Below, piece after piece: positions 212 to 12,005 of a DNA stretch of 64,000 nt (position 1 is the stretch's first letter; each line of letters begins with the position of its first letter). The DNA is from Zygnema circumcarinatum SAG 698-1b (Eukaryota; Plantae; Zygnematophyceae). The DNA lies in contig CM074810.1 in NCBI GenBank assembly GCA_037447605.1, forward strand, positions 1,088,880 through 1,152,879, read 5' to 3'. The notes beneath the pieces were generated by a model. That model was not told the DNA's origin, ran no database searches, and saw nothing but the letters and a program-made list of their open reading frames with translations. A program made the position numbers and the translations under genes.

Positions 212-3010
212 CGGTCCAATATGCTTGAAAGTGGTCATGGTGGTTCAGCATATCCGCAAACGGTACGAACACAAGGTTCCATTCGTCTATGTACCCTTCT
301 CCACTTGTCTCGTTTTCTACGGCTAATGACGAGAAAGTACGTGACCATATGATGGACATGGCCCATGCAAAGTCCTCATAACTTGCATTAGCGATCTTTT
401 CAGGAATGCATCGTTTGTACTCCAGTTCCCAGTCTGCTACAGTCATATGAACCTGCCAAGAAAGGCCGGGCAACCATCAAAACAGTCCATATTGAACGTC
501 AAGTGGCAAGAGGAGTAACTCTTGCTGTTACCGTGCCAAAAATATATATGAAAAAATTGATCATTCCAACTGCTGCTCACATAAAGATTAAATTGGTTAC
601 CAGGAACAAGTGCACGATAAGGGTTCTTGTCAGCTATGGGGTGAAAGGAGGGCAGGGAGAGGAAGGTCAATTGACTAAAAGAGGCGGGAAAACCGAACTG
701 AAGTCGCACCCAGCCTTCAGCAAACTAAAGAGGGTCTATTCAACAATCTTTCCTTCGACGAGGGCCAAAGGCAGAGAGACAAGCAACACTTCGTAATAAG
801 AAAGTGTCAGAGAATGCTCACATCAGTGATTAACTTCTCGTATTCAAACTCCTTAACAAGGTCCGGTTCAAACAACATAGGTAGTGGCACGTAGCTGGGA
901 ATGCTCGAAATATACGGAGCGAAGAAGGATTCCTTGCCCTTAGCCTTTTCTATAAGGAGCCATGCAGCCATAGCTGTATAGTGACGATACCAAATCTGAC
1001 TTTCTGGATGATCGTGTGGAGCAAAGCCTTTGGCTATTAACTTACTACTAGATATGATGAGCTTGCTTGGCACAGACAAAAGGATTGTCCCAGCTTCTAT
1101 ATTCTTGTTTGCAACCAGACTAATATCCGCTCTGCAGCCAAAGCATGCCTCACAAATCAAACCGTTAGTGTGCCTGCAACATTCCTTTGCCTTCACAAGA
1201 AAGGCAAACTTCTGCCATTTGATTGTACGTTCGTCACAAGTGAACACTACTCAATAAACGAAAAAGACAACCAGCTTTATGGACTGACTTCCACTACATA
1301 AATGAATATGGGCTTGACAGTTTTGGTACGTGGCTGCATCCAGTTCACCAAACTCGAAGACCATCCAGGAATTTACAATAATCTTGGCATGCATTTTAGT
1401 TCTGCAGCCATGTTTCATTGATAAGCAGTCACGTAACTGGCAGATAATATACTTGTGGTCTAATATCAACAGATGGAGTGCATCCTGAAAAATAAGAGCC
1501 TACGTTTCCTTGTTACTCCTTATCACATGATGGGATTTACATAGACGTAGTAGAAAACGAAAAAAAAAGTCAAAGAAAAGAAGAAAACAAAGAAGTCTTC
1601 CTCATATCAAGACATATTTCAACCCAAACTTCGGACAAGTGAACACTGAGACCTTGGTAACTTTACTGTGAGGATTTCCTGAATTGAGAACTTTAAATTA
1701 AGGTTCAAATTGGGCAGATCCCAACTTGACATGCAAAGTGCCTCACTTAGACTCTCCTAACGTCTCATTGACCTTCGGTTCAGAAATATAGAGCCCCTGC
1801 CTTGAGTTTGTTCACGTTTGTTAGCGAATCTCCTTTATGAGACTTCAACGCCCATAAAAAAAAAATTGCACTCTGCGGCAAGAAGCTGCAATGAGACACC
1901 CGGTAAACGATAAATATTGTAGACTTAATGCTTATTTCAAGCGTGCTAATTATTAACGAGCCTCGACAAGTAGTGAACAGTGTCGAATCAAACATTTTTC
2001 ACGACCGGTTTTCAGCTTACCTTTCAACTCTCGCATTCATTCTTGCTGGTGGTGCCTTGGCGGTTTGTTCCACAACGGCCTGCACAACGGGGAGAATTCA
2101 GTCGAGAAATTATTCTAGCCACCGTCACAAAGCAAGTTTTAACAAGCTTTATGAATAACGATGATAATGAGAACCATACGAAGCCAGTCGACGCATGCAG
2201 CAGGACAAATCAACAGAATTAGGTAGGTCAAAAAGCTGCGGAAGCAGCATATCACATGTTTTGAGTCAATTAGCTTCCAGCACAATCCCAGATAGGCTGC
2301 TCGCGTTCCCACTTCTACTAAATTCATAATTATCACTTTCGCTGCCAGAGCTAATGCTCAACCTTACAGCCGGCTTCTTAAGGTAGGCATTAGATGTAGA
2401 GTAAGACTTCTCACTCGCAAATAACTTGACTGAGATCCAACGTCGGAAACTCCATTTTCGTTTAGCCACTTTATGAGATCATTCAGAATTGTTTCCTCCA
2501 CACCAGCTCCATTCCCTGAACATCGGCCCAAGTAGCTCAATCAGGCATTTGTTAATCGCTGCCAGAGGTCTCGTCATTCTCCTCCACGAAGTCCACGCCT
2601 ACCCGCCCTTGCAGCTGCAAGGGGAGAGACGTTTGAAGACCTCCCATAGAGCTCTGATCGCGGCAGCGAGCAATGCAGCTACACTCCATCCACATAAACA
2701 AACTAGCACATCATAAGCAGGCTCAGAGCACGGCCTACACGATGCGGAAACGCCAAAAAGCCTGCATCTTCATTTATATTTTGCAAGGATCCATCGCTTC
2801 CTTCATACCTTGCTGCTTCTCGCTGTCCAGACTCCCTTCTGCCAGCTGGCTCCCTGCAAGAGCATGCAGCAAGAGAAATCCTCCCAGCGTCAGCCAGATA
2901 ATCCGATCGCCTTTTCCCGCGAGACGCCCGCCGCCATGAGCAGCAGCGCCAGCAGCAGCCATGGCTGCCAAGGGAGAGAGGGACGAGAGAGGCGAGGGTT
3001 CCCTCGCCAT
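212..3010 (-). CDS. SET-domain protein (Rubisco-LSMT/SETD3-like) paralogue A with N-terminal hydrophobic signal/anchor; 3' part runs off the window start
   Basis: ATG 3010. Exon 1 3010-2809 (RIIWLTLGGFLLLHALAG..SEKQQ|GT). Exon 2 2515-2415 (NGAGVEETILNDLIKWLNENGV). Exon 1131-822 (LVANKNIEAGTILLSVP..AAWLLIEKAKGKESFFAPYISSIP). Exon 452-212 (FAWAMSIIWSRTF..VPFADMLNH). GT-AG borders; internal small exons uncertain. Confidence 0.85.
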
Positions 3011-3305
3011 GGCTGCCTGCCTGCCTGCAACTCTCTGCCAAATGGTTTTTCATTCCAAGGGGAGGCACAGAGGCACTTTTCCCTCGATAAAGTAAAATTC
3101 AACGCTTCGTCAAAGTCAGGTGCAACGTACCGTACCATACGGTCAAGGAGGCAGTCCGTACTCCGTAGGCTTTTAAAGGTTTGTGACTTTGTGAGTGGAC
3201 CTTGAAGTCACAGTCAACGTCAACGTCAGGGTCAAAGTCAAAGTCAATGAAAACGTTACAGTATTACTGGGATGGATTAGTTACGACTATATAATATATA
3301 TTATA

Positions 3306-4252
3306 GGGTAGTGATATTTCCACCCCTTTTTTGGATCCAAACACCCCTTCCCGGCCGGGCAGATTTCAAAAGGGATTAAAAAAGGAAAATGCTTTTTTCA
3401 CACCTTTTTGGAATCGATACCCACCTTCTTCCGTCGGCTGATTTTATTTTTGCTAACCAAGGAAAATGATACCCCATCACTGCATTTTGAATACTGTATC
3501 CCGCCTCCCTGAATTTTTTTTTTGAGGGAAAAAAATATCTGCCAGCCCGAATCCGCTCGAAGTGGAAAATCCGTCCGCCACGAGATCGTTCGCGGGAGTC
3601 CGTCCTTCACACGTGTGTGTCAATCGCAGCTGTCGATTCCCACGCAGATCGCACCACTGCAGGTCACCGTTCGATCTGCAGCAGGGCTCGATCTTAGCGA
3701 ATGGAAAGCGCCCACGAGTCCCGTCAAAGCCGGATCGCACGTGCGAGTGCGCGCGTCTTTCGGCCCGAGATCTCGTCATTGTTAGCTCCCAGCCAATCAA
3801 CAGCTGCCACGTGTTGCAGTTTTGACGTGGAAAATTTTGATTGGTCCAAGCTCTCAATGTACGAAATTTTGGGTTCCTCAAAGTTGCGACCGTACGATAT
3901 ATGTACGAACATTTTTTGAGGCGACTTTGGCGGGATACGTGGGCACGTGCCATTCGCTGTGAACGAGCCCGGTGCAGATCAAATAGTGATCTGCCGTGTT
4001 GCGATCTGCGAGGGAATTGACGGCTGCGATTGACCGCACGCGTGAAAAGAAATTCAAGTAGGCGGGATATTCAAAATGGGGTGACGGGTTATCATTTTTC
4101 TTGTTTCGCAAAAATAAAATCTGCCGATGGAAGGTGGGTATCGATTCCAAAAAGGTGTGAAAAAAGCATTTTCCGTTTTTAATCCCTTTTGAAATCTGCC
4201 CGGCCGGGAAGGGGTGATTGGATCCAAAAAAGGGGTGGAAATATCACTACCC
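3306..4252. mobile_element. Non-autonomous DNA transposon with ~190-200 bp TIRs (Mutator-like MITE)
   Basis: Starts GGGTAGTGATATTTCCACCCC and ends GGGGTGGAAATATCACTACCC. Inverted homology covers about 3306-3500 vs 4065-4252. 8-bp direct repeat ATATTATA at 3298-3305 and 4253-4260. No transposase ORF. Superfamily assignment is inferred from the long G-starting TIRs. Confidence 0.85.
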
Positions 4253-4294
4253 ATATTATATTATACAACTGTGACGACTATAACGGCTGATATA

Positions 4295-5178
4295 CAGGCC
4301 TCTTCAAATAGGGGATTTCGGCTTAAGATAGGGGACTGTCCCCTAACTTGGTTTTGTAAAAACACGTAAATATGGACTGTACGGACGAAACCGTGCACGT
4401 ACGGACGAGAATTTTGTGGAGACCTTGCTTCATCATTTCCCAACACTGCTACCGTCGAGTCTGATTTTTCAGTAATTGGATGGGAGAAAGACGAGTTTCG
4501 AAAGAGGTTGACAGACTTTTCATTGGAAGGAATTCTTCACTGCAAACAGTTTGATAGTTTGACCGCTCTTCGAGGGTCTCTTTGAGTAGTTTGCATCACT
4601 TCTATAGCTGTCTTGATCAGCTAAAACTCCTAAGGGAGTGAGACCATTTTTCATTTCATTTCTAATTTTAGTTCCTATTTCAGTTTTTCTTTTGTGACTA
4701 CACCTAGAATTTCAGAGGTTATGATTTGGAATAGAGTTTTTGTGAGTAAATTTCAAGACTATGATAGATTCTAAAGTGATACTTGGAGTAATTAATGATG
4801 GATGGAAAAGGAAATAGAGAGCTTAGGATTGGATCTACAAAGTTTCAGTGCAATTGGGTTTTTGAATAAGCAACTATATGTTGTGATTGCCAAATGCACA
4901 GTTGTTCTAATTGATTGATAAAATTTATCAATCTATAAGAGTCGAAGAGGTTGCACCAGTTTTTAAAGCCGTGTTGTTATACCAACAAGTAAAGTTCATA
5001 TACATCATTGCTATCGTGGTTGCAAATGCAATTCATTTCCATTTTGTTTTTAACCAAAAAAATGCTTTTTTGGGGCTTGTGTGGTATTTAAGTTGAAATC
5101 ACGTAAACTAATCTCAAAATCTTACATAAATAAGCTATTTACGATATTTAGGGGATCTCCCCTATTTGAAGGGGCCTG
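4295..5178. mobile_element. hAT-type non-autonomous DNA transposon (MITE)
   Basis: TIR CAGGCCTCTTCAAATAGGGGA / TCCCCTATTTGAAGGGGCCTG (1 mismatch). Perfect 8-bp TSD CTGATATA at 4287-4294 and 5179-5186. Confidence 0.9.
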
Positions 5179-5192
5179 CTGATATATATTAA

Positions 5193-5447
5193 TTTACAAC
5201 GCCTTTACAACATGTACGGTCGTACGGTCGTACCACTGTACGGTATTATGCGGCCCGAGCACGAGCAGACAGAGTGAACCAGACGGACGCATTTCGCAAC
5301 GCCAACGCCAAAACGACCTAATTTTGGTATGGTACGACCGTACGACCGTACGAGTACGGTCGTTAATTGTTCAAAACGAGTGGGTATAATATATGTAATA
5401 AAGTGTTTTACTTTGTAATATATTACTAATTTTAAACCCGTTGTAAA
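5193..5447. repeat. Small foldback / MITE-like element
   Basis: Perfect 22-bp inverted repeat at 5214-5235 and 5330-5351 (GTACGGTCGTACGGTCGTACCA). Outer TTTACAACG/CGTTGTAAA pair in AT-rich flanks. Confidence 0.55.
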
Positions 5448-5785
5448 GTATATAATATATTCGGAATTTATAACGCGGGCCATCCCTAGTAGGGAATACT
5501 GTTAAACGTTAATCCAAACCAAGGTCAATGAGAAATTTGTGGAAATTTAAATTAAATTTAATCAAACAAAATTAAGTCAACGACCGAGCCAAGGTCAACA
5601 TCTACTTGTCTGGTTCTTGGGCCTTGGCATTCTCTTTTCCCTTGAAAAGAGAATGTGTGTCCTTCCCTTGATAAAGTCAAATTACACGGCATCACAAACG
5701 CTGTTCGTTTATGGGATTCCGTTCTCAGTTCCGTCCGGCATGTGGCGTAGTCACAAACGTGAGGGACAAGCCGGAGGTTGCAACA

Positions 5786-5820
5786 ATGTTGATGTTGATG
5801 TTGATGTTGATGTTGATGTT
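5786..5820. repeat. (GATGTT)n microsatellite
   Basis: About 6 tandem hexamers. Confidence 0.9.
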
Positions 5821-6225
5821 GCACACGGCGTGGCGTGAGCGATGTTGAACATGACACCAGCAAGCAAGGCGGCAGCCTGCTCAATCCAACTTTGTTTTCC
5901 AGGGCTGGCTTTAGCATACATGGGTAGTAGATTCGAGTCTTCGAGGAGTAGCTTCGAGGGAGAAAAAAAGGGAAGCGAGTGAGAAGGAGAGGAGAAGAAG
6001 AAGAGAACAAGAAGAAGCAACACCAAACTCGATTTGAGGAAGAAGAACCACGAGCGTCAATGGAAGAATTTCCAAGTGGTGGGGATGACCCCCAATGCTA
6101 ATTGTGGCGAGGGGTCATCGACTCATCTATTAAATGTATGAATATGTATATAATATAATATATGTATATAATATGTATGTATGTGGCAATATAGTGGCAA
6201 AATTTTCAAAAGTGAAAAACGCAAA

Positions 6226-6227
<2 letters not shown>

Positions 6228-6257
<30 letters not shown>
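6228..6257. repeat. (GA)n microsatellite
   Basis: Visible GA run. Confidence 0.95.
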
Positions 6258-6260
<3 letters not shown>

Positions 6261-6366
6261 GGGATCAATGCCACTTTCTTCATTTTCAAAAGGAAGTTTA
6301 ATGATTTAAGTCAAAATCCAAGAAACTAATTCTGGCCACACGAGTTCCAAAACGAGAAGATAATGT

Positions 6367-6483
6367 GGGTGCGACACCGGGACTTCCCGGGAGGGAACCC
6401 ATCCCAGTATTATTTCAGCCCACAGGCGCTTAGCTGCGGGATTCTGAAGGGATTTGGCGTAGTAGCCTAGGTATGATCGCACC
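6367..6483 (-). rRNA. Solitary 5S rRNA gene or 5S pseudogene
   Basis: Minus strand reads GGTGCGATCATACCTAGGCTACTACGCCAAATCCCTTCAGAATCCCGCAGCTAAGCGCCTGTGGGCTGAAATAATACTGGGATGGGTTCCCTCCCGGGAAGTCCCGGTGTCGCACCC. It has 5S length and motifs, and helices I, II and IV can pair. Some normally invariant positions differ. Confidence 0.8.
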
Positions 6484-6972
6484 ACAATATAATCAATAAC
6501 GTTACTACTAAATAATTATAGTAATTTTTATACAATCCAATTTCCAAGGCCGCCAAAGTTCTGATCCGTACGGCGGCTGGGCGAATGATGGGAGGCCGTC
6601 GCCGTGCTGGCATCCACGTCCAATGGCAGAGCGCCACGTGTACAAATGACGACACGTGACGTTTTTTAATGCAAATGGCGCTTGTCTCATTCGTCAATTC
6701 TTGACTGCAGAGCACAGAGGCGAAAGGCCCTCGCAGAAACGGACAAAAATTTGCTTGCAGTCCGCCACTCCCCAGACCTTCTGGCCAATCAAAAGGCGCC
6801 ATACAGTTGACGAGCCTCTCAGATTTGGCCACGTGGACTGGTGCTTAAATCGCCGCAGAAGAATTATGGCGGATTTGCATGGACTTTTTTGCTATTTTCT
6901 TGGAAGGCCCTGCAAGAAGGGATAGCTGCAGGAGGAAGCGAGGGCTGCTGCTGGGAAGGTAGGGGGCTGGCC

Positions 6973-9900
6973 ATGGGCATGGCCATGGCGGACGAGCATG
7001 CGCGGAGCAGGCGAACCGCCAGGCGCTTCGTTATGGCGCTGGGAGGGGCTCTGCTTCTCCACACTTTTGTAGCGGACGCGTTGGAGGAGGTGGATGGGGC
7101 TCGTGTTGAGAAGCCGCGTGGTGTGTGGAGGAGCTGGAAACTGAGAGGGAGGATTCAGATTGGATAATTATGGCATTTTTTTTTCAGTACTTGCATTTTT
7201 TTTGGTTTTCATTCGAGCGGCTCACTGTGATTTGGTTTGAGCTTTTCGATGACCTATGTGCTGGCCGTTTTCGTCTGTACTGTTCTTTCAGTGACGTGAA
7301 AAGAGTTCCGACACTGCCAGATTTTCTAACAGGAACATGGTGCTGTTGATTAGCAATGGACAATAGCCTATTTCATTATGAAAGGGGTGATATGCAGGGA
7401 CAGGAGCTGGTTCGGAGGAGAAACTTCTGGCTGATTTCGTAATGTGGCTGAACAGCAATGGAGTAGACAGCATCGGAACTTCTTCAAGTCTGTTAAGGGT
7501 GTGAAAATCCTCGATTCATGAAGCACTAGCTTTCGCATCAGATAGAGTTGTCCGAGCTGACTCGAGGTCTCCAATAGCTGCGACATGTTTTCTCTAGTGC
7601 CTCCAAGCGATCATGAGAGGTTTTCTGCACATTCGTTGGATATTTTGTTTGGTCCGAGTGTCTGCAGCTTAATGCCTGAACTGTTTTCTACTTGCTTTAT
7701 AATGGTGTTCTTTTGCACTGTATTCTGTTGCACGCAGGCGGTGGTGGACAACAGGACTTTTGAACCATTGCAAGCTACCAATGCAAGGTTGTAAAGGCAA
7801 GCCTTGTCATTCACAGATAAGGTGGAAAAAGCAAAAGTTATTCAAATACGTCTGGAGTAGAGAACGCCGAAAGCATACCGCATCAGGACAAAAGAAAAAA
7901 ACAAACCAGTTATATTGATCGTGAAATCGTGACCCTCGACCTGTTCTCAACACTATATGGTATCTATGGACTTGGGATAGTCTAGAGGCATCCAAGGTTA
8001 GTTCATACCTGGTTCTGTTGGCAATGAAGCTGATCCATGCCCATAAGCTATCTAAGTTTTGGGTCCTGAAAAATTGAATGGTCCAATGTGGGAGGGAAGA
8101 GAAGCTGCAAACCAAGTGTCTCAGACATTCATGAAAACCAGAAATAAACTTGAGTCAAACTAGAAGTGGAAATCTATTCAAGAGCCAGAAAACCTAGGAT
8201 CAGAATTGCTGAAGAGAGCAAAAAGGAACAAGACATTTGGACAGCCGAGGATGTCACTTGAGTTTAGGAACAGTTCATTTGTCAACGCAAATAACTTGTC
8301 AAGAAAAATAGTAATCGTCGGCAGATAAGCGTAACAATCGACGACATACAATATCTCAATTCAATTAAGAACTCTGGGACACCTTGCACACTTTTACGAA
8401 TCTGGCAGTCGTTTTTCTTGACAAGGAGTGCATTACCCCCGCAATACACCATTTGATCTTTGAAAAATCAGTGATGTTGCAGGTAATCTCACAGTTTACG
8501 TAGTTGATGCCATCAAGTCAGGCTGACCTGCCTAAACGTTTGATTTCGAGGTTTGAGATTGGTGGGAGTGATTGTTGGTGTAAACGAATCATCTGTCGGA
8601 GCCTCTAAGATGCAGACGACAGCCACGCACCACATGTGTCCTTGATTCGTTGTGTTTTGGCAAGGCCAGGCTAGCAGGCTGAGCAGAATTAGAAAATCCG
8701 ATACGTCACATCCGAGCATCATTTGCGATTATCTGCCAGACAATCAAATCTTAACCACTCCACTTCTTGCTATGAAACGAGGATTGTTGCTGCTTGCATG
8801 CATTTGCAGCTGAGGTCAGTTCTGATAGATAGGTGCTCAGGTTGGGTAGGTCTATTGCTGCTGTACATGAAGAGGACACACACACTTAGACACATATAAC
8901 GTGATGCCTGAAATCCTTTTTTTCTTGCAGGGCGGATATTAGCATTGTTGCAACGAAAGAGATAAAAGCTGGGGATCAACTTCTTTCTATTCCAAGCAAG
9001 CTCCTTGTATCCAGCAAAAAACTAGTAGCTGAAGGCTTTACACCTTATGAGCAGGCTGACAGTACTTCCTGGCAGCATTACACAACTATGGCTGCGTGGC
9101 TCCTTTTAGAAAAGGCAAAGGGTCAAGATTCCTTTTTTGCTCCCTATATTTCGATCCTACCTGCCTACGTACCCTTACCTACGTTTTATGAATCGGACCT
9201 TCTCAAGGAGTTTGAATACGATAAACTTATTTCTGAGGTGAGGTTCCCTCAGATGGCATCATCTGGTATCGTTTTGGCGCTCTGCCTGCTGTACCATGTG
9301 CGCGTCCTGAACGGCTGGTCTATCCTCGCGCTCATTCTGCAGGCTCAATCGACTGCAGCGTATTTTGAAGCAGAATATGAACGCTCCGCGAAGGAAAAAA
9401 TTGCCAACGCGAGTTTGGAGGAGTTCAAGTGGGCCATGTCCATATTGTGGTCACGCTGCTTTTCAGCGAATGGTCTAAACGATGTGGGCGAGATGGAGAG
9501 CTCAGAGGCGGGCTTAACTGATTGGCACGTCGTTCTCATACCACTTGGTGACATGCTGAACCACCATGACTACTACCAAGCAAACTGGAGCGTAAGGACT
9601 CCTGGCAACCTTGATTTCTCTGCACGCTATAAATTGAGAACAAAAAGAGCTGTCCAAGGTGATTGTTACTGGGCGTGATGCTGGGTGAAAGTTTGATTGC
9701 TCCTACTAGCACTTTTTTTATTGTGTGTAATCTGATGGCCTGGTCTAGCCTCTCCAAAAAAGGGCAGACTAACGTAGAAGTTCCTGCGCATTGAAATTCC
9801 TTCTGAGGCCTACTCTAGCCAATGACTGATGTCAAGGCCTCTATATCATCTTCCCTCTAAATTCTCTGCCCCCCCTCCCCGCCCGTCCCCGTTCGGCCGC

Positions 9901-11036
9901 TACTTCTTTTGCTAAGCTAAGGAAAGGGGATGTCTGGCTGCTGACAGTGTGCTACAGATGGGAGCACCTGCTCATTTACTTCCCTTTTTGATGTTGCGGA
10001 GGGTATGCCCGTGTACACCAGCTATGGTCAGAAGACCAGTGATGAGCTCGCACTATCGTATGGCTTTGTGTCTCCGGAGGTCGTGCATGATCGCGCTGTA
10101 TTGTTTCAGAGCACTGATGATCTGGTGGCATACTATATATCGAAAAGACCTCAAATGCAGTATGAAGATACCCATAGGCAGTGGGCAGAATATATAGCAG
10201 AGAGAACAAAGCAGGAGGTCGACGAGCTGTTGAAAGCGGGCAAGGGAAACAGCGCAAACACTTTCGCAGCTGACCACCAAGGTGTATCTGGGTTCACTAT
10301 CCAAAATGGGGCTAAGGTGGACCCACGGCTCGTTGCTGCCATTGCTTCTATTTTTGCGTTTGAAGCCAAGAATGCAGGTAAATTTCACTTTTGGCTCTAT
10401 GCAGATCTGATAGACGAATCCATGCTGTGGAATAGAGATAGGTTGTTATATTGGCGAGGTTGAGGTTTACCGGTTTACCGGCTCTGTGCAATGCATGCAC
10501 TTTTAGATAGTTCTGATTGCCGGCAGGTTGAGGATGTATGTTTTCCAGAGCCCCCATATGAGACGTTGGCCGCGCTTAGTATTACTTTCTCGGAGGACTT
10601 CTCACGCCAAGATTGCGAGGGAGTGCTCAAGGAGCCCCAAGACGACCTTCATGGCATGCAGATGGTTGTGCATATACTTCATCAGAGGGTCGTTGAGATG
10701 ATTCACAACTTCAGTACGACCTACGAGGATGACAAGATGGAGCTAGAGCGGCTTCGGGACTGCAAGCATGATTTCATGAAAGGAGGCTGCAAGGAGGTGT
10801 GGAAAACTCATGATCGAGAATGGGAAATCATTCTACGACTGAGGATGGCAAAGAAATATCTTCTCTATAATGCGGAAGCACAGCTGGCCAGAAGTTGCTG
10901 GGCAACTATATCTGATTTGATTGGGCATGAAGGGCAATCGGACGAGGGCTTGGGCCATGCAGACTTAGAGACCTCGCAGGATAATTCGGGTGATGCTGCA
11001 CGCAATCCTGAAGATGAAGCCTGGACGGAACTTTAA
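6973..11036 (+). CDS. SET-domain protein (Rubisco-LSMT/SETD3-like) paralogue B with N-terminal signal peptide/anchor and Rubisco-substrate-binding-like C-terminal domain
   Basis: ATG 6973. Exon 1 6973-7120 (RRFVMALGGALLLHTFVADA). Exon 2 7398-7498. Exons ~8930-9237 and ~9343-9591 (FKWAMSILWSRCF..PLGDMLNH). Exon ~9950-10377 (VYTSYGQKTSDELALSYGF). Last exon ~10527-11036 (HNFSTTYEDDKMELERL..LRLRMAKKYLL). Confidence 0.88.
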
Positions 11037-12005
11037 GGCGCCATTCTGAACCGAACTGTGAGGTTGAAGTGCTCGTGAGCTGTGTGAAAGCTGGCGAGAT
11101 TTCTCTTGAAGCACTGCAAGCAAGTGCTCCTCCTGCGCTCCATTGCTCTCTAGAAGGCAATGACGGTAGAGGAGACATTGTGACTGCTCGGGCTCCTGAG
11201 GATGAGCTCATTCACAAATAGGATTACAGGCCTTTGCCTTTATAATTATTGCGCTGTGTCTGCGGCATAAGCTGTGATGCAGAACTTATAATATAATGCT
11301 GTTACCTTAGTGTGGTTCTCTTTCATCTACTTTTGATAGCTTAAATGTCTGGCAAGGAAAACCAAAAGATTTGATGCGCACCTGACAATGACTGATGAAG
11401 TCCTCGGGAAGGGTCGGGATCCACTGAGGATACCTCGAAACGAATGAGCCAACCAAGTTGCCACCTGTGCATCTTTTCCGACTTGGCGAGATTGGACACG
11501 CATTTGAGTGCATCCTCAATTGATATCGTCCTGAGGAACACTCTCAGCAAGTTTTTTCTAAGGTGTGCTCATAAGCTCCTTTCTGGTACAGGAAGACTAC
11601 TCAAGACAAAAGGCAAAAGTTGGAACTCTGTGCAGGGAAAACACTGCAAGAGAGCCGATATGAACGTTGACAACCTGCTTTCTGCTTCTAGCTGGAGGAG
11701 GACCACCTCAGACTAGAACGTTTCTGTACCTCTGATGCATATGAACGTCCAGCCACGGTGAGTATAGTTACTCAAAGGTCTGCACGAGAAGAAGAAGAAG
11801 CCCATGGCTGTTCTAAGCGCCCTCTTCCTGAAGGGCCAGACACGCTCCAGTCCAATGGCGCCACCCATGGCACCAATGCCAATACATCCATCTCTTTTGC
11901 CCTTGCCCTCTGTTTACCCCCTCCTCCTCCTCCCTCTCGTTCTCGCTCTCCCTCTCCCTCTTCTCCTACCCCTGAGGCACTAGAGAAAAGATAAAGCCAA
12001 TGTCA

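What the first reader, a model, noticed from the sequence alone, without database searches (positions are those of the whole stretch)
212..11036. Head-to-head pair of SET-domain methyltransferases that both carry a signal peptide or signal anchor
Seen: both paralogues begin with basic residues and then a conserved hydrophobic stretch, RIIWLTLGGFLLLHALAG and RRFVMALGGALLLHTFVADA (shared LGGxLLLH; AxA-type cleavage sites). They share intron positions (exon 2 is 101 nt in both) and roughly 60% SET-core identity by eye. The DMLNH motif is intact in both, and YG..YGF is visible in B. Established: LSMT/SETD3-family SET enzymes are normally cytosolic, nuclear or plastid-stromal Lys/His methyltransferases, and plant Golgi methylation uses imported SAM. 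Inference: these may be secretory-pathway or membrane-anchored protein methyltransferases, a class I know of no description for. Retention of the segment after an old duplication argues that it is functional.
Basis: partly seen in the sequence, partly recalled or inferred. Interest (0 to 1): 0.75.

Follow-up and report, generated by a model that had tools for sequence, protein, structure and literature searches.

The report
Secretory-pathway SET-domain methyltransferase gene pair
Two neighbouring, diverged copies of a protein-methylating enzyme gene in a green alga both start with an entry ticket for the cell's secretory system, and relatives carry the same ticket plus an ER 'stay here' tag, pointing to protein methylation inside the ER or secretory pathway by an enzyme type never reported there.

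Summary
Two divergently transcribed paralogues encode SETD3/SETD6/Rubisco-LSMT-class SET-domain methyltransferases. Gene A (minus strand) starts at 3010 or 2962 and is cut by the window's left edge. Gene B (plus strand, 6973-11036) is complete at 590 codons.

Both first exons encode a basic stretch, a 16-17-residue hydrophobic core (shared LGGxLLLH) and an AxA site. RNA contigs from three studies confirm all six introns of B, that exon 1 with its ATG is in the mRNA, and the C-terminus WTEL.

- The nearest relatives (Closterium, Spirogloea, transcript contigs; at most 47% identical) have plain signal peptides.
- Several relatives end in HDEL, ADEL or DDEL.
- The subfamily has five conserved cysteines, a Cys-flanked loop that SETD3 lacks, and a conserved NA[S/T] sequon.
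- The substrate-pocket residues (Phe, and Gly in B or Ala in A) match lysine-specific LSMT, not histidine-specific SETD3.

No signal-peptide predictor was available, WTEL is not canonical, and SET motif I has lost its glycines.

This scan already noted the same kind of gene elsewhere in this genome (s1-332352 and s1-343942 with HDEL; s1-383569, 135 kb upstream). I found no published description.

The parts
2809..3010 (-). Gene A exon 1: in-frame ATGs at 3010 and 2962; encodes n-region, hydrophobic core IIWLTLGGFLLLHALA and ALA|GS site; donor CAAG|GTATGA, phase 1
   Evidence: no RNA evidence obtained for A
2855..2962 (-). Gene A: predicted 36-residue signal peptide or anchor, counted from the ATG at 2962
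   Evidence: inference from sequence features
2415..2515 (-). Gene A exon 2 (101 nt), N-terminal helix of the SET fold (LIKWLNENGV)
2021..2079 (-).
   Evidence: counterpart of the RNA-confirmed B micro-exon
822..1131 (-). Gene A exon 4: SET N-lobe and start of the inserted iSET region
213..452 (-). Gene A exon 5: IANAS sequon, SRTF, PFADMLNHH; the gene continues beyond the window's left edge
6973..7120 (+). Gene B exon 1 coding part (ATG 6973); mRNA contig reaches back to 6915
   Evidence: joint 7120/7398 in runs X2, X3, X4 and contig 6915-7119
6973..7080 (+). Gene B: predicted 36-residue signal peptide or anchor (five Arg, FVMALGGALLLHTFVA, ADA|LEE)
   Evidence: inference from sequence features
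7398..7498 (+). Gene B exon 2 (101 nt)
   Evidence: joints
7738..7787 (+).
   Evidence: joints 7498/7738 and 7787/8931 in all four runs
8931..9237 (+). Gene B exon 4: SET N-lobe and iSET
9343..9591 (+). Gene B exon 5: IANAS sequon, SRCF, PLGDMLNHH
9948..10377 (+). Gene B exon 6: catalytic Tyr (TSYG), LSYGF, start of the C-terminal domain
10549..11036 (+). Gene B exon 7: LSMT-type substrate-binding domain with four conserved Cys, acidic tail, C-terminus WTEL and stop TAA; contigs colinear to 11300

Best explanation
A and B are an old inverted duplicate pair of genes for two-domain SET methyltransferases of the SETD3/SETD6/Rubisco-LSMT class. Their first exon encodes an ER signal sequence. It is most likely a cleaved signal peptide of about 36 residues, less likely an uncleaved type II anchor. 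Either way the basic N-flank and acidic C-flank put the catalytic domain in the lumen of the ER or secretory pathway. There it would fold with disulfides, perhaps carry an N-glycan at the conserved NAS site, use imported S-adenosylmethionine and methylate lysines of lumenal or secreted proteins. Shown: the gene structure, the expression and splicing of B, membership of the fold class, intact NH/Tyr catalytic motifs, and signal peptides and HDEL-type ends in relatives. Inferred: ER entry of A and B themselves, cleavage, disulfides, glycosylation, enzyme activity, lysine specificity and the substrates.
For: Fold class: B's exons 4-5 match SETD3 (E 1e-5). The family profile matches SETD3 at 2e-36, LSMT at 1e-28, and also PTAC14 and SETD6. 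The model of the nearest relative, P0001 (pLDDT 77), aligns over its full length to SETD3, SETD6 and LSMT with TM 0.6-0.67. P0001 passes the Pfam SET threshold and P0008 passes the Rubis-subs-bind threshold. Targeting: n-region, h-region and AxA layout is present in both genes. Net charge is +3 (B) or +2 (A) before the core and -2 after it. Relatives have signal peptides. HDEL/ADEL/DDEL ends occur in about five independent lineages, against roughly 0.04 expected among 89 proteins (my estimate). B has an acidic tail ending in -TEL, confirmed in mRNA. Lumenal hallmarks: Cys columns are conserved 18/20, 9/14, 11/12, 15/15 and 14/15 in the core clade, with a variable loop between the third and fourth Cys that SETD3 lacks. 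The NA[S/T] sequon is present in 13/20 core members against 4/27 and 3/40 in the other clades. Constraint: dS is saturated and dN/dS is 0.25 in exon 4. Specificity: the best PDB match is the SETD3 N255F/W273A double mutant solved with a lysine peptide (6V62), because A and B have Phe plus Ala/Gly at these two sites, as LSMT does. SAM import into the plant Golgi is documented (10.1101/2021.07.06.451061).
Against: No SignalP, TargetP or DeepTMHMM run was possible, and there is no localisation data. The presequence is long (36 residues). Its core holds a conserved His and Gly-Gly, which is unusual for a signal peptide. B has RR just before the core, which resembles a Tat signal. B's WTEL is not a canonical retrieval signal, and A's C-terminus lies off the window. 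SET motif I (GxG) reads D-I-S in A and B, so SAM binding is not assured. B lacks the first conserved Cys. The [S/T] of the sequon is also a helix N-cap conserved in cytosolic relatives, so the sequon is weak evidence. A's start codon and expression were not checked. Some close relatives (P0011, P0012, P0014) are annotated without a signal peptide; these may be truncated models or real cytosolic forms.
Confidence: 0.65

Rival explanations
1. The N-terminus is an organellar presequence: either a bipartite plastid/thylakoid-lumen signal (transit peptide, then hydrophobic core, then AxA) or a mitochondrial one. This would fit the plastid habit of LSMT, PPKMT and PTAC14 relatives.
For: LSMT and PTAC14 are among the structural relatives. 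B has RR-F-V-M before the core, a twin-arginine-like motif, and A read from ATG 3010 has a 36-residue Ser/Pro/Ala-rich lead.
Against: B has only 18 residues before the core, too few for a stromal targeting domain, and there is no in-frame ATG further upstream. A has no RR. Relatives have short, classical ER signal peptides and HDEL ends. Streptophytes have primary plastids, so a signal peptide is not a plastid-import signal there.
Confidence: 0.12
2. The hydrophobic stretch is an uncleaved type II signal anchor, so the enzymes are Golgi or ER membrane proteins with a lumenal catalytic domain, like plant Golgi glycosyl- and methyltransferases.
For: The LGGxLLLH motif is conserved at protein level despite saturated dS, which suggests more than generic hydrophobicity. 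The 19-residue Kyte-Doolittle mean is 1.78 in B. The oomycete relative P0139 has a clear internal anchor at residues 50-68.
Against: The uncharged core is only 16-17 residues and is followed directly by AxA. Close relatives have short cleavable-type peptides, and some have HDEL, a signal of soluble lumenal proteins.
Confidence: 0.2
3. A and B are lumenal but catalytically inert: binding or chaperone-like proteins built on a SET scaffold.
For: Motif I glycines are replaced (RADIS(I/L)VA). One sister group (P0008/P0151) has lost the NH and YGF motifs, so loss of activity does occur in this family.
Against: A and B keep SR, D-x-x-NH, the catalytic Tyr (SYG) and YGF under purifying selection.
Confidence: 0.15
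4. The hydrophobic N-terminus tethers a cytosol-facing enzyme to a membrane.
For: None beyond the presence of a hydrophobic segment.
Against: The charge distribution (positive N-flank, acidic C-flank) predicts a lumenal C-terminal domain. The conserved Cys and the HDEL ends in relatives would then have no explanation.
Confidence: 0.04

Closest known systems
Rubisco large-subunit methyltransferase (LSMT; PDB 1MLV, 1OZV, 2H21)
   Same: Two-domain SET plus substrate-binding fold. Shares SR, D-x-x-NH, SYG and (D/S)YGF motifs, and has Phe and a small residue at the two substrate-pocket sites, as expected of a lysine methyltransferase.
   Different: LSMT has a chloroplast transit peptide and works in the stroma. 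A and B have an ER-type signal sequence, a Cys-flanked inserted loop, further conserved Cys, an acidic tail and no GxG in motif I. Sequence identity is under 20%.
SETD3 (actin His73 methyltransferase; PDB 3SMT, 6ICV, 6MBJ)
   Same: Best sequence and fold match in the PDB.
   Different: SETD3 is cytosolic and histidine-specific through N255 and W273. A and B carry Phe and Ala/Gly there, and so match the lysine-accepting double mutant 6V62 best. SETD3 was not secreted in the METTL9 study.
SETD6 and PTAC14/PAP7
   Same: Same structural class.
   Different: These are a cytosolic/nuclear lysine methyltransferase and a subunit of the plastid RNA polymerase complex. Neither is known to have a signal peptide.
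METTL9 (secreted/ER protein histidine methyltransferase)
   Same: A protein methyltransferase with a signal peptide, N-glycans and secretory-pathway residence (preprint 10.64898/2025.12.23.696137). It sets a precedent that protein methylation can occur in this compartment.
   Different: Seven-beta-strand fold, histidine pi-N specificity, mammalian. It is unrelated in sequence to SET enzymes.
Unnamed Zygnematophyceae proteins (Closterium GJP78844.1, CAI5484577.1, CAI5472921.1, CAI5474679.1, CLOM_g13753; Spirogloea SM000133S26835/6, SM000074S21642)
   Same: True family members at 32-44% identity. They have signal peptides, the same conserved Cys, and HDEL in GJP78844.1.
   Different: All are annotated 'hypothetical' or 'unnamed' and none has been studied. 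A and B are closer to each other (53-64%) than to any of them.

Membership tests
SETD3/SETD6/LSMT-class (class VII) SET-domain methyltransferases | SET domain (Pfam PF00856), split by an iSET insertion | tested here: met
   Single exons score weakly (A exon 4 E 0.25) because the domain is split over exons. B exons 4-5 match SETD3 at E 1e-5. The family profile including the A and B exons matches SETD3 at 2e-36. Relative P0001 scores 25.2 bits against a cut-off of 22.4.
SETD3/SETD6/LSMT-class (class VII) SET-domain methyltransferases | C-terminal helical Rubisco-LSMT substrate-binding domain (PF09273) | tested here: inconclusive
   B exon 7 scores 13.8 bits against a cut-off of 21.6. Relative P0008 passes at 24.3 bits. 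The P0001 model aligns over its full length to SETD3 and LSMT, and B exon 7 aligns to that domain in the family alignment.
SETD3/SETD6/LSMT-class (class VII) SET-domain methyltransferases | Cofactor and catalytic motifs: SR, D-x-x-N-H, catalytic Tyr (xYG), C-terminal YGF | tested here: met
   B has WSRCF, GDMLNHH, TSYG and LSYGF. A has WSRTF and ADMLNHH; the rest of A is off the window. The residue roles come from my own knowledge of the LSMT and SETD3 structures.
SETD3/SETD6/LSMT-class (class VII) SET-domain methyltransferases | Motif I, G-x-G before the first strand (EGLGLVA / EGFGLRA) | tested here: not met
   A and B read RADIS(L/I)VA. Relatives keep only the second Gly or none. The contacts here are main-chain, so the effect on SAM binding is unknown.
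Proteins with a cleavable ER signal peptide | Positive n-region, uncharged hydrophobic h-region, small residues at -3 and -1 | tested here: met
   B has five Arg, a 16-residue core and A-D-A|L. A has R/K/R, a 16-17-residue core and A-L-A|G. This was judged by rule of thumb only.
Proteins with a cleavable ER signal peptide | Call by a trained predictor (SignalP, TargetP, DeepTMHMM) on the full spliced protein | not testable with these tools
   No such predictor is offered, and the spliced protein was not assembled.
Soluble ER residents | C-terminal H/KDEL-type retrieval signal ([KRHQSA][DENQ]EL) | tested here: not met
   B ends in WTEL after an acidic tail. A's end is off the window. Relatives P0018, P0022, P0043 and P0115 end in HDEL, and P0024 in ADEL. 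B may therefore be weakly retained or travel onwards.
Thylakoid Tat/Sec lumen proteins | Stromal transit domain of about 30 or more residues, then an (RR) hydrophobic core, then AxA | tested here: not met
   B has RR but only 18 residues before the core and no upstream in-frame ATG. A lacks RR.

The most novel reading that the evidence does not exclude
Together with the paralogues noted elsewhere in this genome (one with HDEL), A and B are part of a multigene ER/secretory-lumen lysine-methylation system of zygnematophyte-type green algae, with counterparts in stramenopiles, Rhodelphis and haptophytes. This would be the first case of SET-domain enzymes acting inside the secretory pathway. It would imply SAM supply to the ER lumen and a set of methyl-lysine marks on lumenal, cell-wall or secreted proteins.
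Probability: 0.45. Interest if true: 0.8.

Novelty: new variant of a known kind. Interest (0 to 1): 0.62.

Why it matters
SET-domain protein methyltransferases are known from the nucleus, cytosol and plastid stroma. Protein methylation inside the secretory pathway has only just been proposed, for one unrelated enzyme (METTL9). A conserved, expressed, multi-copy family of signal-peptide and HDEL-bearing SET enzymes would open a new compartment for lysine methylation. It would raise the question of how SAM reaches the ER lumen. It would also give testable candidates in the closest algal relatives of land plants, which secrete abundant wall and mucilage proteins. The pair in this window shows that the targeting exon has been kept through an old duplication.

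Tried and rejected
- **Word search, 257-residue stop-free ORF 8905-9675:** no hit. The tool's length window shuts out proteins of about 590 residues, so this blank means nothing.
- **Word searches with P0001 and P0043:** these found only 3 proteins and 1 protein. No land-plant member was seen, but that is not evidence of absence.
- **Exon-by-exon Pfam scan:** sub-threshold hits only. Exon 5 alone against the PDB gave nothing.
- **First gene models:** joining exon 2 directly to the RADIS exon needed a non-canonical donor in A and gave a frame clash. I rejected them in favour of a micro-exon, which RNA then confirmed for B.
- **Disulfide test:** the tool returns no model coordinates, so Cys pairing was not tested.
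- **Loose-end sequences of the RNA contigs:** not found in the window.
- **N-glycan sequon count in B (4 sequons):** not above chance by my estimate. Only the conservation of one site is notable.
- **Thylakoid-lumen and mitochondrial targeting:** considered and judged unlikely.
- **Gene A transcription:** not checked, because the single read-laying run went to gene B.
- **Literature searches**: no description of a signal-peptide-bearing SET enzyme of this class.
Full report
**What is there.** Stop-free frames, splice sites and homology show two genes of one family transcribed away from each other. They are separated by a 3.96-kb spacer.

- Gene A lies on the minus strand. It has in-frame ATGs at 3010 and 2962 and exons 3010-2809, 2515-2415, 2079-2021, 1131-822 and 452-213. 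It then leaves the window, so only its 5' half is visible.
- Gene B lies on the plus strand and is complete. Its exons are 6973-7120, 7398-7498, 7738-7787, 8931-9237, 9343-9591, 9948-10377 and 10549-11036. This gives 1770 coding bases, or 590 codons.
- No third copy lies in the window.

**Check of the observation.**
- The quoted N-termini are present.
- Exon 2 is 101 nt in both genes.
- The five comparable introns share position and phase.
- Identity is 64% in exon 4 and 53% in exon 5.
- DMLNHH is in both genes, and TSYG...LSYGF is in B.

After the 101-nt exon 2 (phase 0) the next large exon needs two bases of a split codon. A systematic search of the intron found a matching micro-exon in each gene. 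Both begin AVV(D/E) and end AG|GT, which completes the Arg of a conserved RADIS motif.

**RNA evidence.** Six public runs of the same organism hold about 70% of the words of 6600-11100. I laid four of them, from three studies, on 6500-11300, and they proved to be spliced, that is RNA-derived, contigs.
- All six B introns appear as GT..AG joints at exactly the predicted places, including both sides of the micro-exon in all four runs.
- One contig covers 6915-7119 and then joins 7398, so exon 1 with the ATG at 6973 is part of the mRNA.
- There is no depth upstream of about 6822.
- Contigs run colinear from 10546 to 11300, which confirms the C-terminus WTEL and the stop.
- Minor forms: retention of intron 1, unspliced intron 3, and an alternative donor at 7996 in one run.
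- In three runs a contig reads a CT-rich leader that is not in the window up to three bases before the ATG. Another carries 255 foreign bases up to 7729. I take this as a second near-identical copy or allele. It remains unexplained but leaves the coding N-terminus unchanged.
- Gene A's transcription was not tested, because the single read-laying run was used on B.

**What the proteins are.**
- B's exons 4-5 match SETD3 (E 1e-5).
- A profile of the family, including the A and B exons as separate rows, matches SETD3 at 2e-36, Rubisco LSMT at 1e-28, and also PTAC14 and SETD6.
- The AlphaFold model of the nearest relative, P0001 (pLDDT 77, pTM 0.78), aligns over its full length to SETD3, SETD6 and LSMT with TM 0.6-0.67 by target.
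- Pfam SET and Rubis-subs-bind thresholds are passed by relatives. The single exons of A and B do not pass them.
- Motifs SR, D-x-x-NH, the catalytic Tyr and YGF are intact. Motif I has lost its glycines (RADIS(I/L)VA).
- At the two SETD3 sites that define histidine specificity (N255, W273), A and B have Phe and Ala/Gly, as LSMT does. Accordingly the best PDB hit is 6V62, the N255F/W273A mutant crystallised with a lysine peptide.
- That this mutant methylates lysine is my own recollection of the literature. I infer lysine specificity from it.

**Relatives and the targeting question.** A full HMMER search of 1.84 billion representatives gave only 28 hits at E 1e-10 or better, and none above 47% identity. 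A and B are each other's closest kin. Named relatives are from Closterium and Spirogloea, both Zygnematophyceae.

Their N-termini are plain signal peptides. Examples are P0018 (MLFVKLLLSLLLISPLQSNA) and P0001 (MGPGGRKALLIIACVLCVLPHARA), the latter with an in-frame stop upstream in its transcript. By a crude hydrophobicity rule, 43 of 89 full-length hits are signal-peptide-like. Several 'no SP' rows are near-identical to SP-bearing rows and look like truncated models.

Family members end in HDEL (P0018 and P0022 of Closterium, P0043, and Rhodelphis P0115), ADEL (P0024), DDEL (P0040) and HEEL (P0080). With ordinary residue frequencies I expect about 0.04 such ends among 89 proteins.

A second clade of 700-950-residue proteins is from stramenopiles and is SP-like in 23 of 29 rows. 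The Pythium member has an internal anchor.

In the core clade five Cys columns are conserved (18/20, 9/14, 11/12, 15/15, 14/15). The third and fourth flank a loop of variable length that SETD3 lacks. An NA[S/T] sequon is kept in 13/20 core members, against 4/27 and 3/40 elsewhere. B keeps four of the five Cys. A has the first one, and the other four columns fall in the part of A that is off the window.

**A and B themselves.** The net charge is positive before the core and negative after it, which predicts a lumenal C-terminal domain. The core is 16-17 residues and is followed by A-x-A. Counted from ATG 2962 in A and ATG 6973 in B, the predicted cut falls after residue 36 in both genes. dS between the copies is saturated and exon 4 has dN/dS 0.25. 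The LGG-LLLH codons differ synonymously at five of seven positions. The segment is therefore held by selection on the protein. B's tail is acidic and ends in WTEL. This resembles ER residents but is not canonical.

**Rivals.**
- A plastid or thylakoid-lumen signal is suggested by B's RR motif and by the family's plastid members. However, B has only 18 residues ahead of the core with no upstream ATG, A lacks RR, and relatives carry HDEL.
- An uncleaved type II anchor remains possible, and the conserved motif would fit it.
- Loss of activity is possible given motif I. The sister group P0008/P0151 has lost the NH and YGF motifs, which A and B keep.

**Literature.** Six full-text searches found no report of a signal-peptide-bearing SET enzyme of this class. 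A 2025 preprint presents METTL9, a different fold, as the first secreted protein methyltransferase, and found SETD3 not secreted. Golgi SAM import in plants is documented.

**Earlier notes of this scan.** The same kind of gene was recorded elsewhere in this genome: one with SP plus HDEL (s1-332352 and s1-343942, followed up with the same conclusion) and one 135 kb upstream of this window (s1-383569). I did not examine those loci.

**Limits.** Every search used single exons or the stop-free stretch 8932-9591 by reference, and relatives from the databases stood in for the full protein. No signal-peptide predictor and no model coordinates were available.

**Verdict.** This is a new variant of a known enzyme kind, and one of several such genes in this genome.

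Noticed in passing
window 6366-6484 (-): A full-length 5S rRNA match (63.4 bits, gathering score 38, model 1-120), standing alone between the two SET genes about 490 nt upstream of gene B's ATG.
   Followed up: no
window 3290-4260 and 4295-5178: A foldback/MITE-like element with nested inverted arms (123 nt at 98%, then 66 and 67 nt), followed by a second element with 35-nt inverted ends. Together they fill much of the spacer between A and B.
   Followed up: no
window 6970 and 7729: RNA contigs of three runs continue upstream of these points with sequence absent from the window: a CT-rich leader ending GGACGGCA just before GCCATG, and 255 nt before 7729. This suggests a second near-identical copy or allele of gene B.
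   Followed up: partly
window 7788-7996: An alternative donor at 7996 joined to 8931 in one run only, plus intron-retaining contigs (7092-7497, 7759-8958). These are probably unproductive isoforms or pre-mRNA.
   Followed up: no
Spirogloea muscicola scaffold s133 (P0014 at 341009-344733, P0012 at 355263-358278): The two Spirogloea relatives are neighbouring genes on one strand, so tandem duplication of this family also occurred there.
   Followed up: no
proteins P0139 (Pythium oligandrum TMW65373.1), P0107 (Tribonema minus), P0096 (Mallomonas), P0115 (Rhodelphis marinus): A separate clade of 700-950-residue SETD3-like proteins with signal peptides or an anchor in stramenopiles, and a Rhodelphis member ending in HDEL. 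All are annotated as hypothetical.
   Followed up: partly
window 5787-5822 and 6228-6259: A (GTTGAT)n run and a (GA)n microsatellite in the spacer (read).
   Followed up: no
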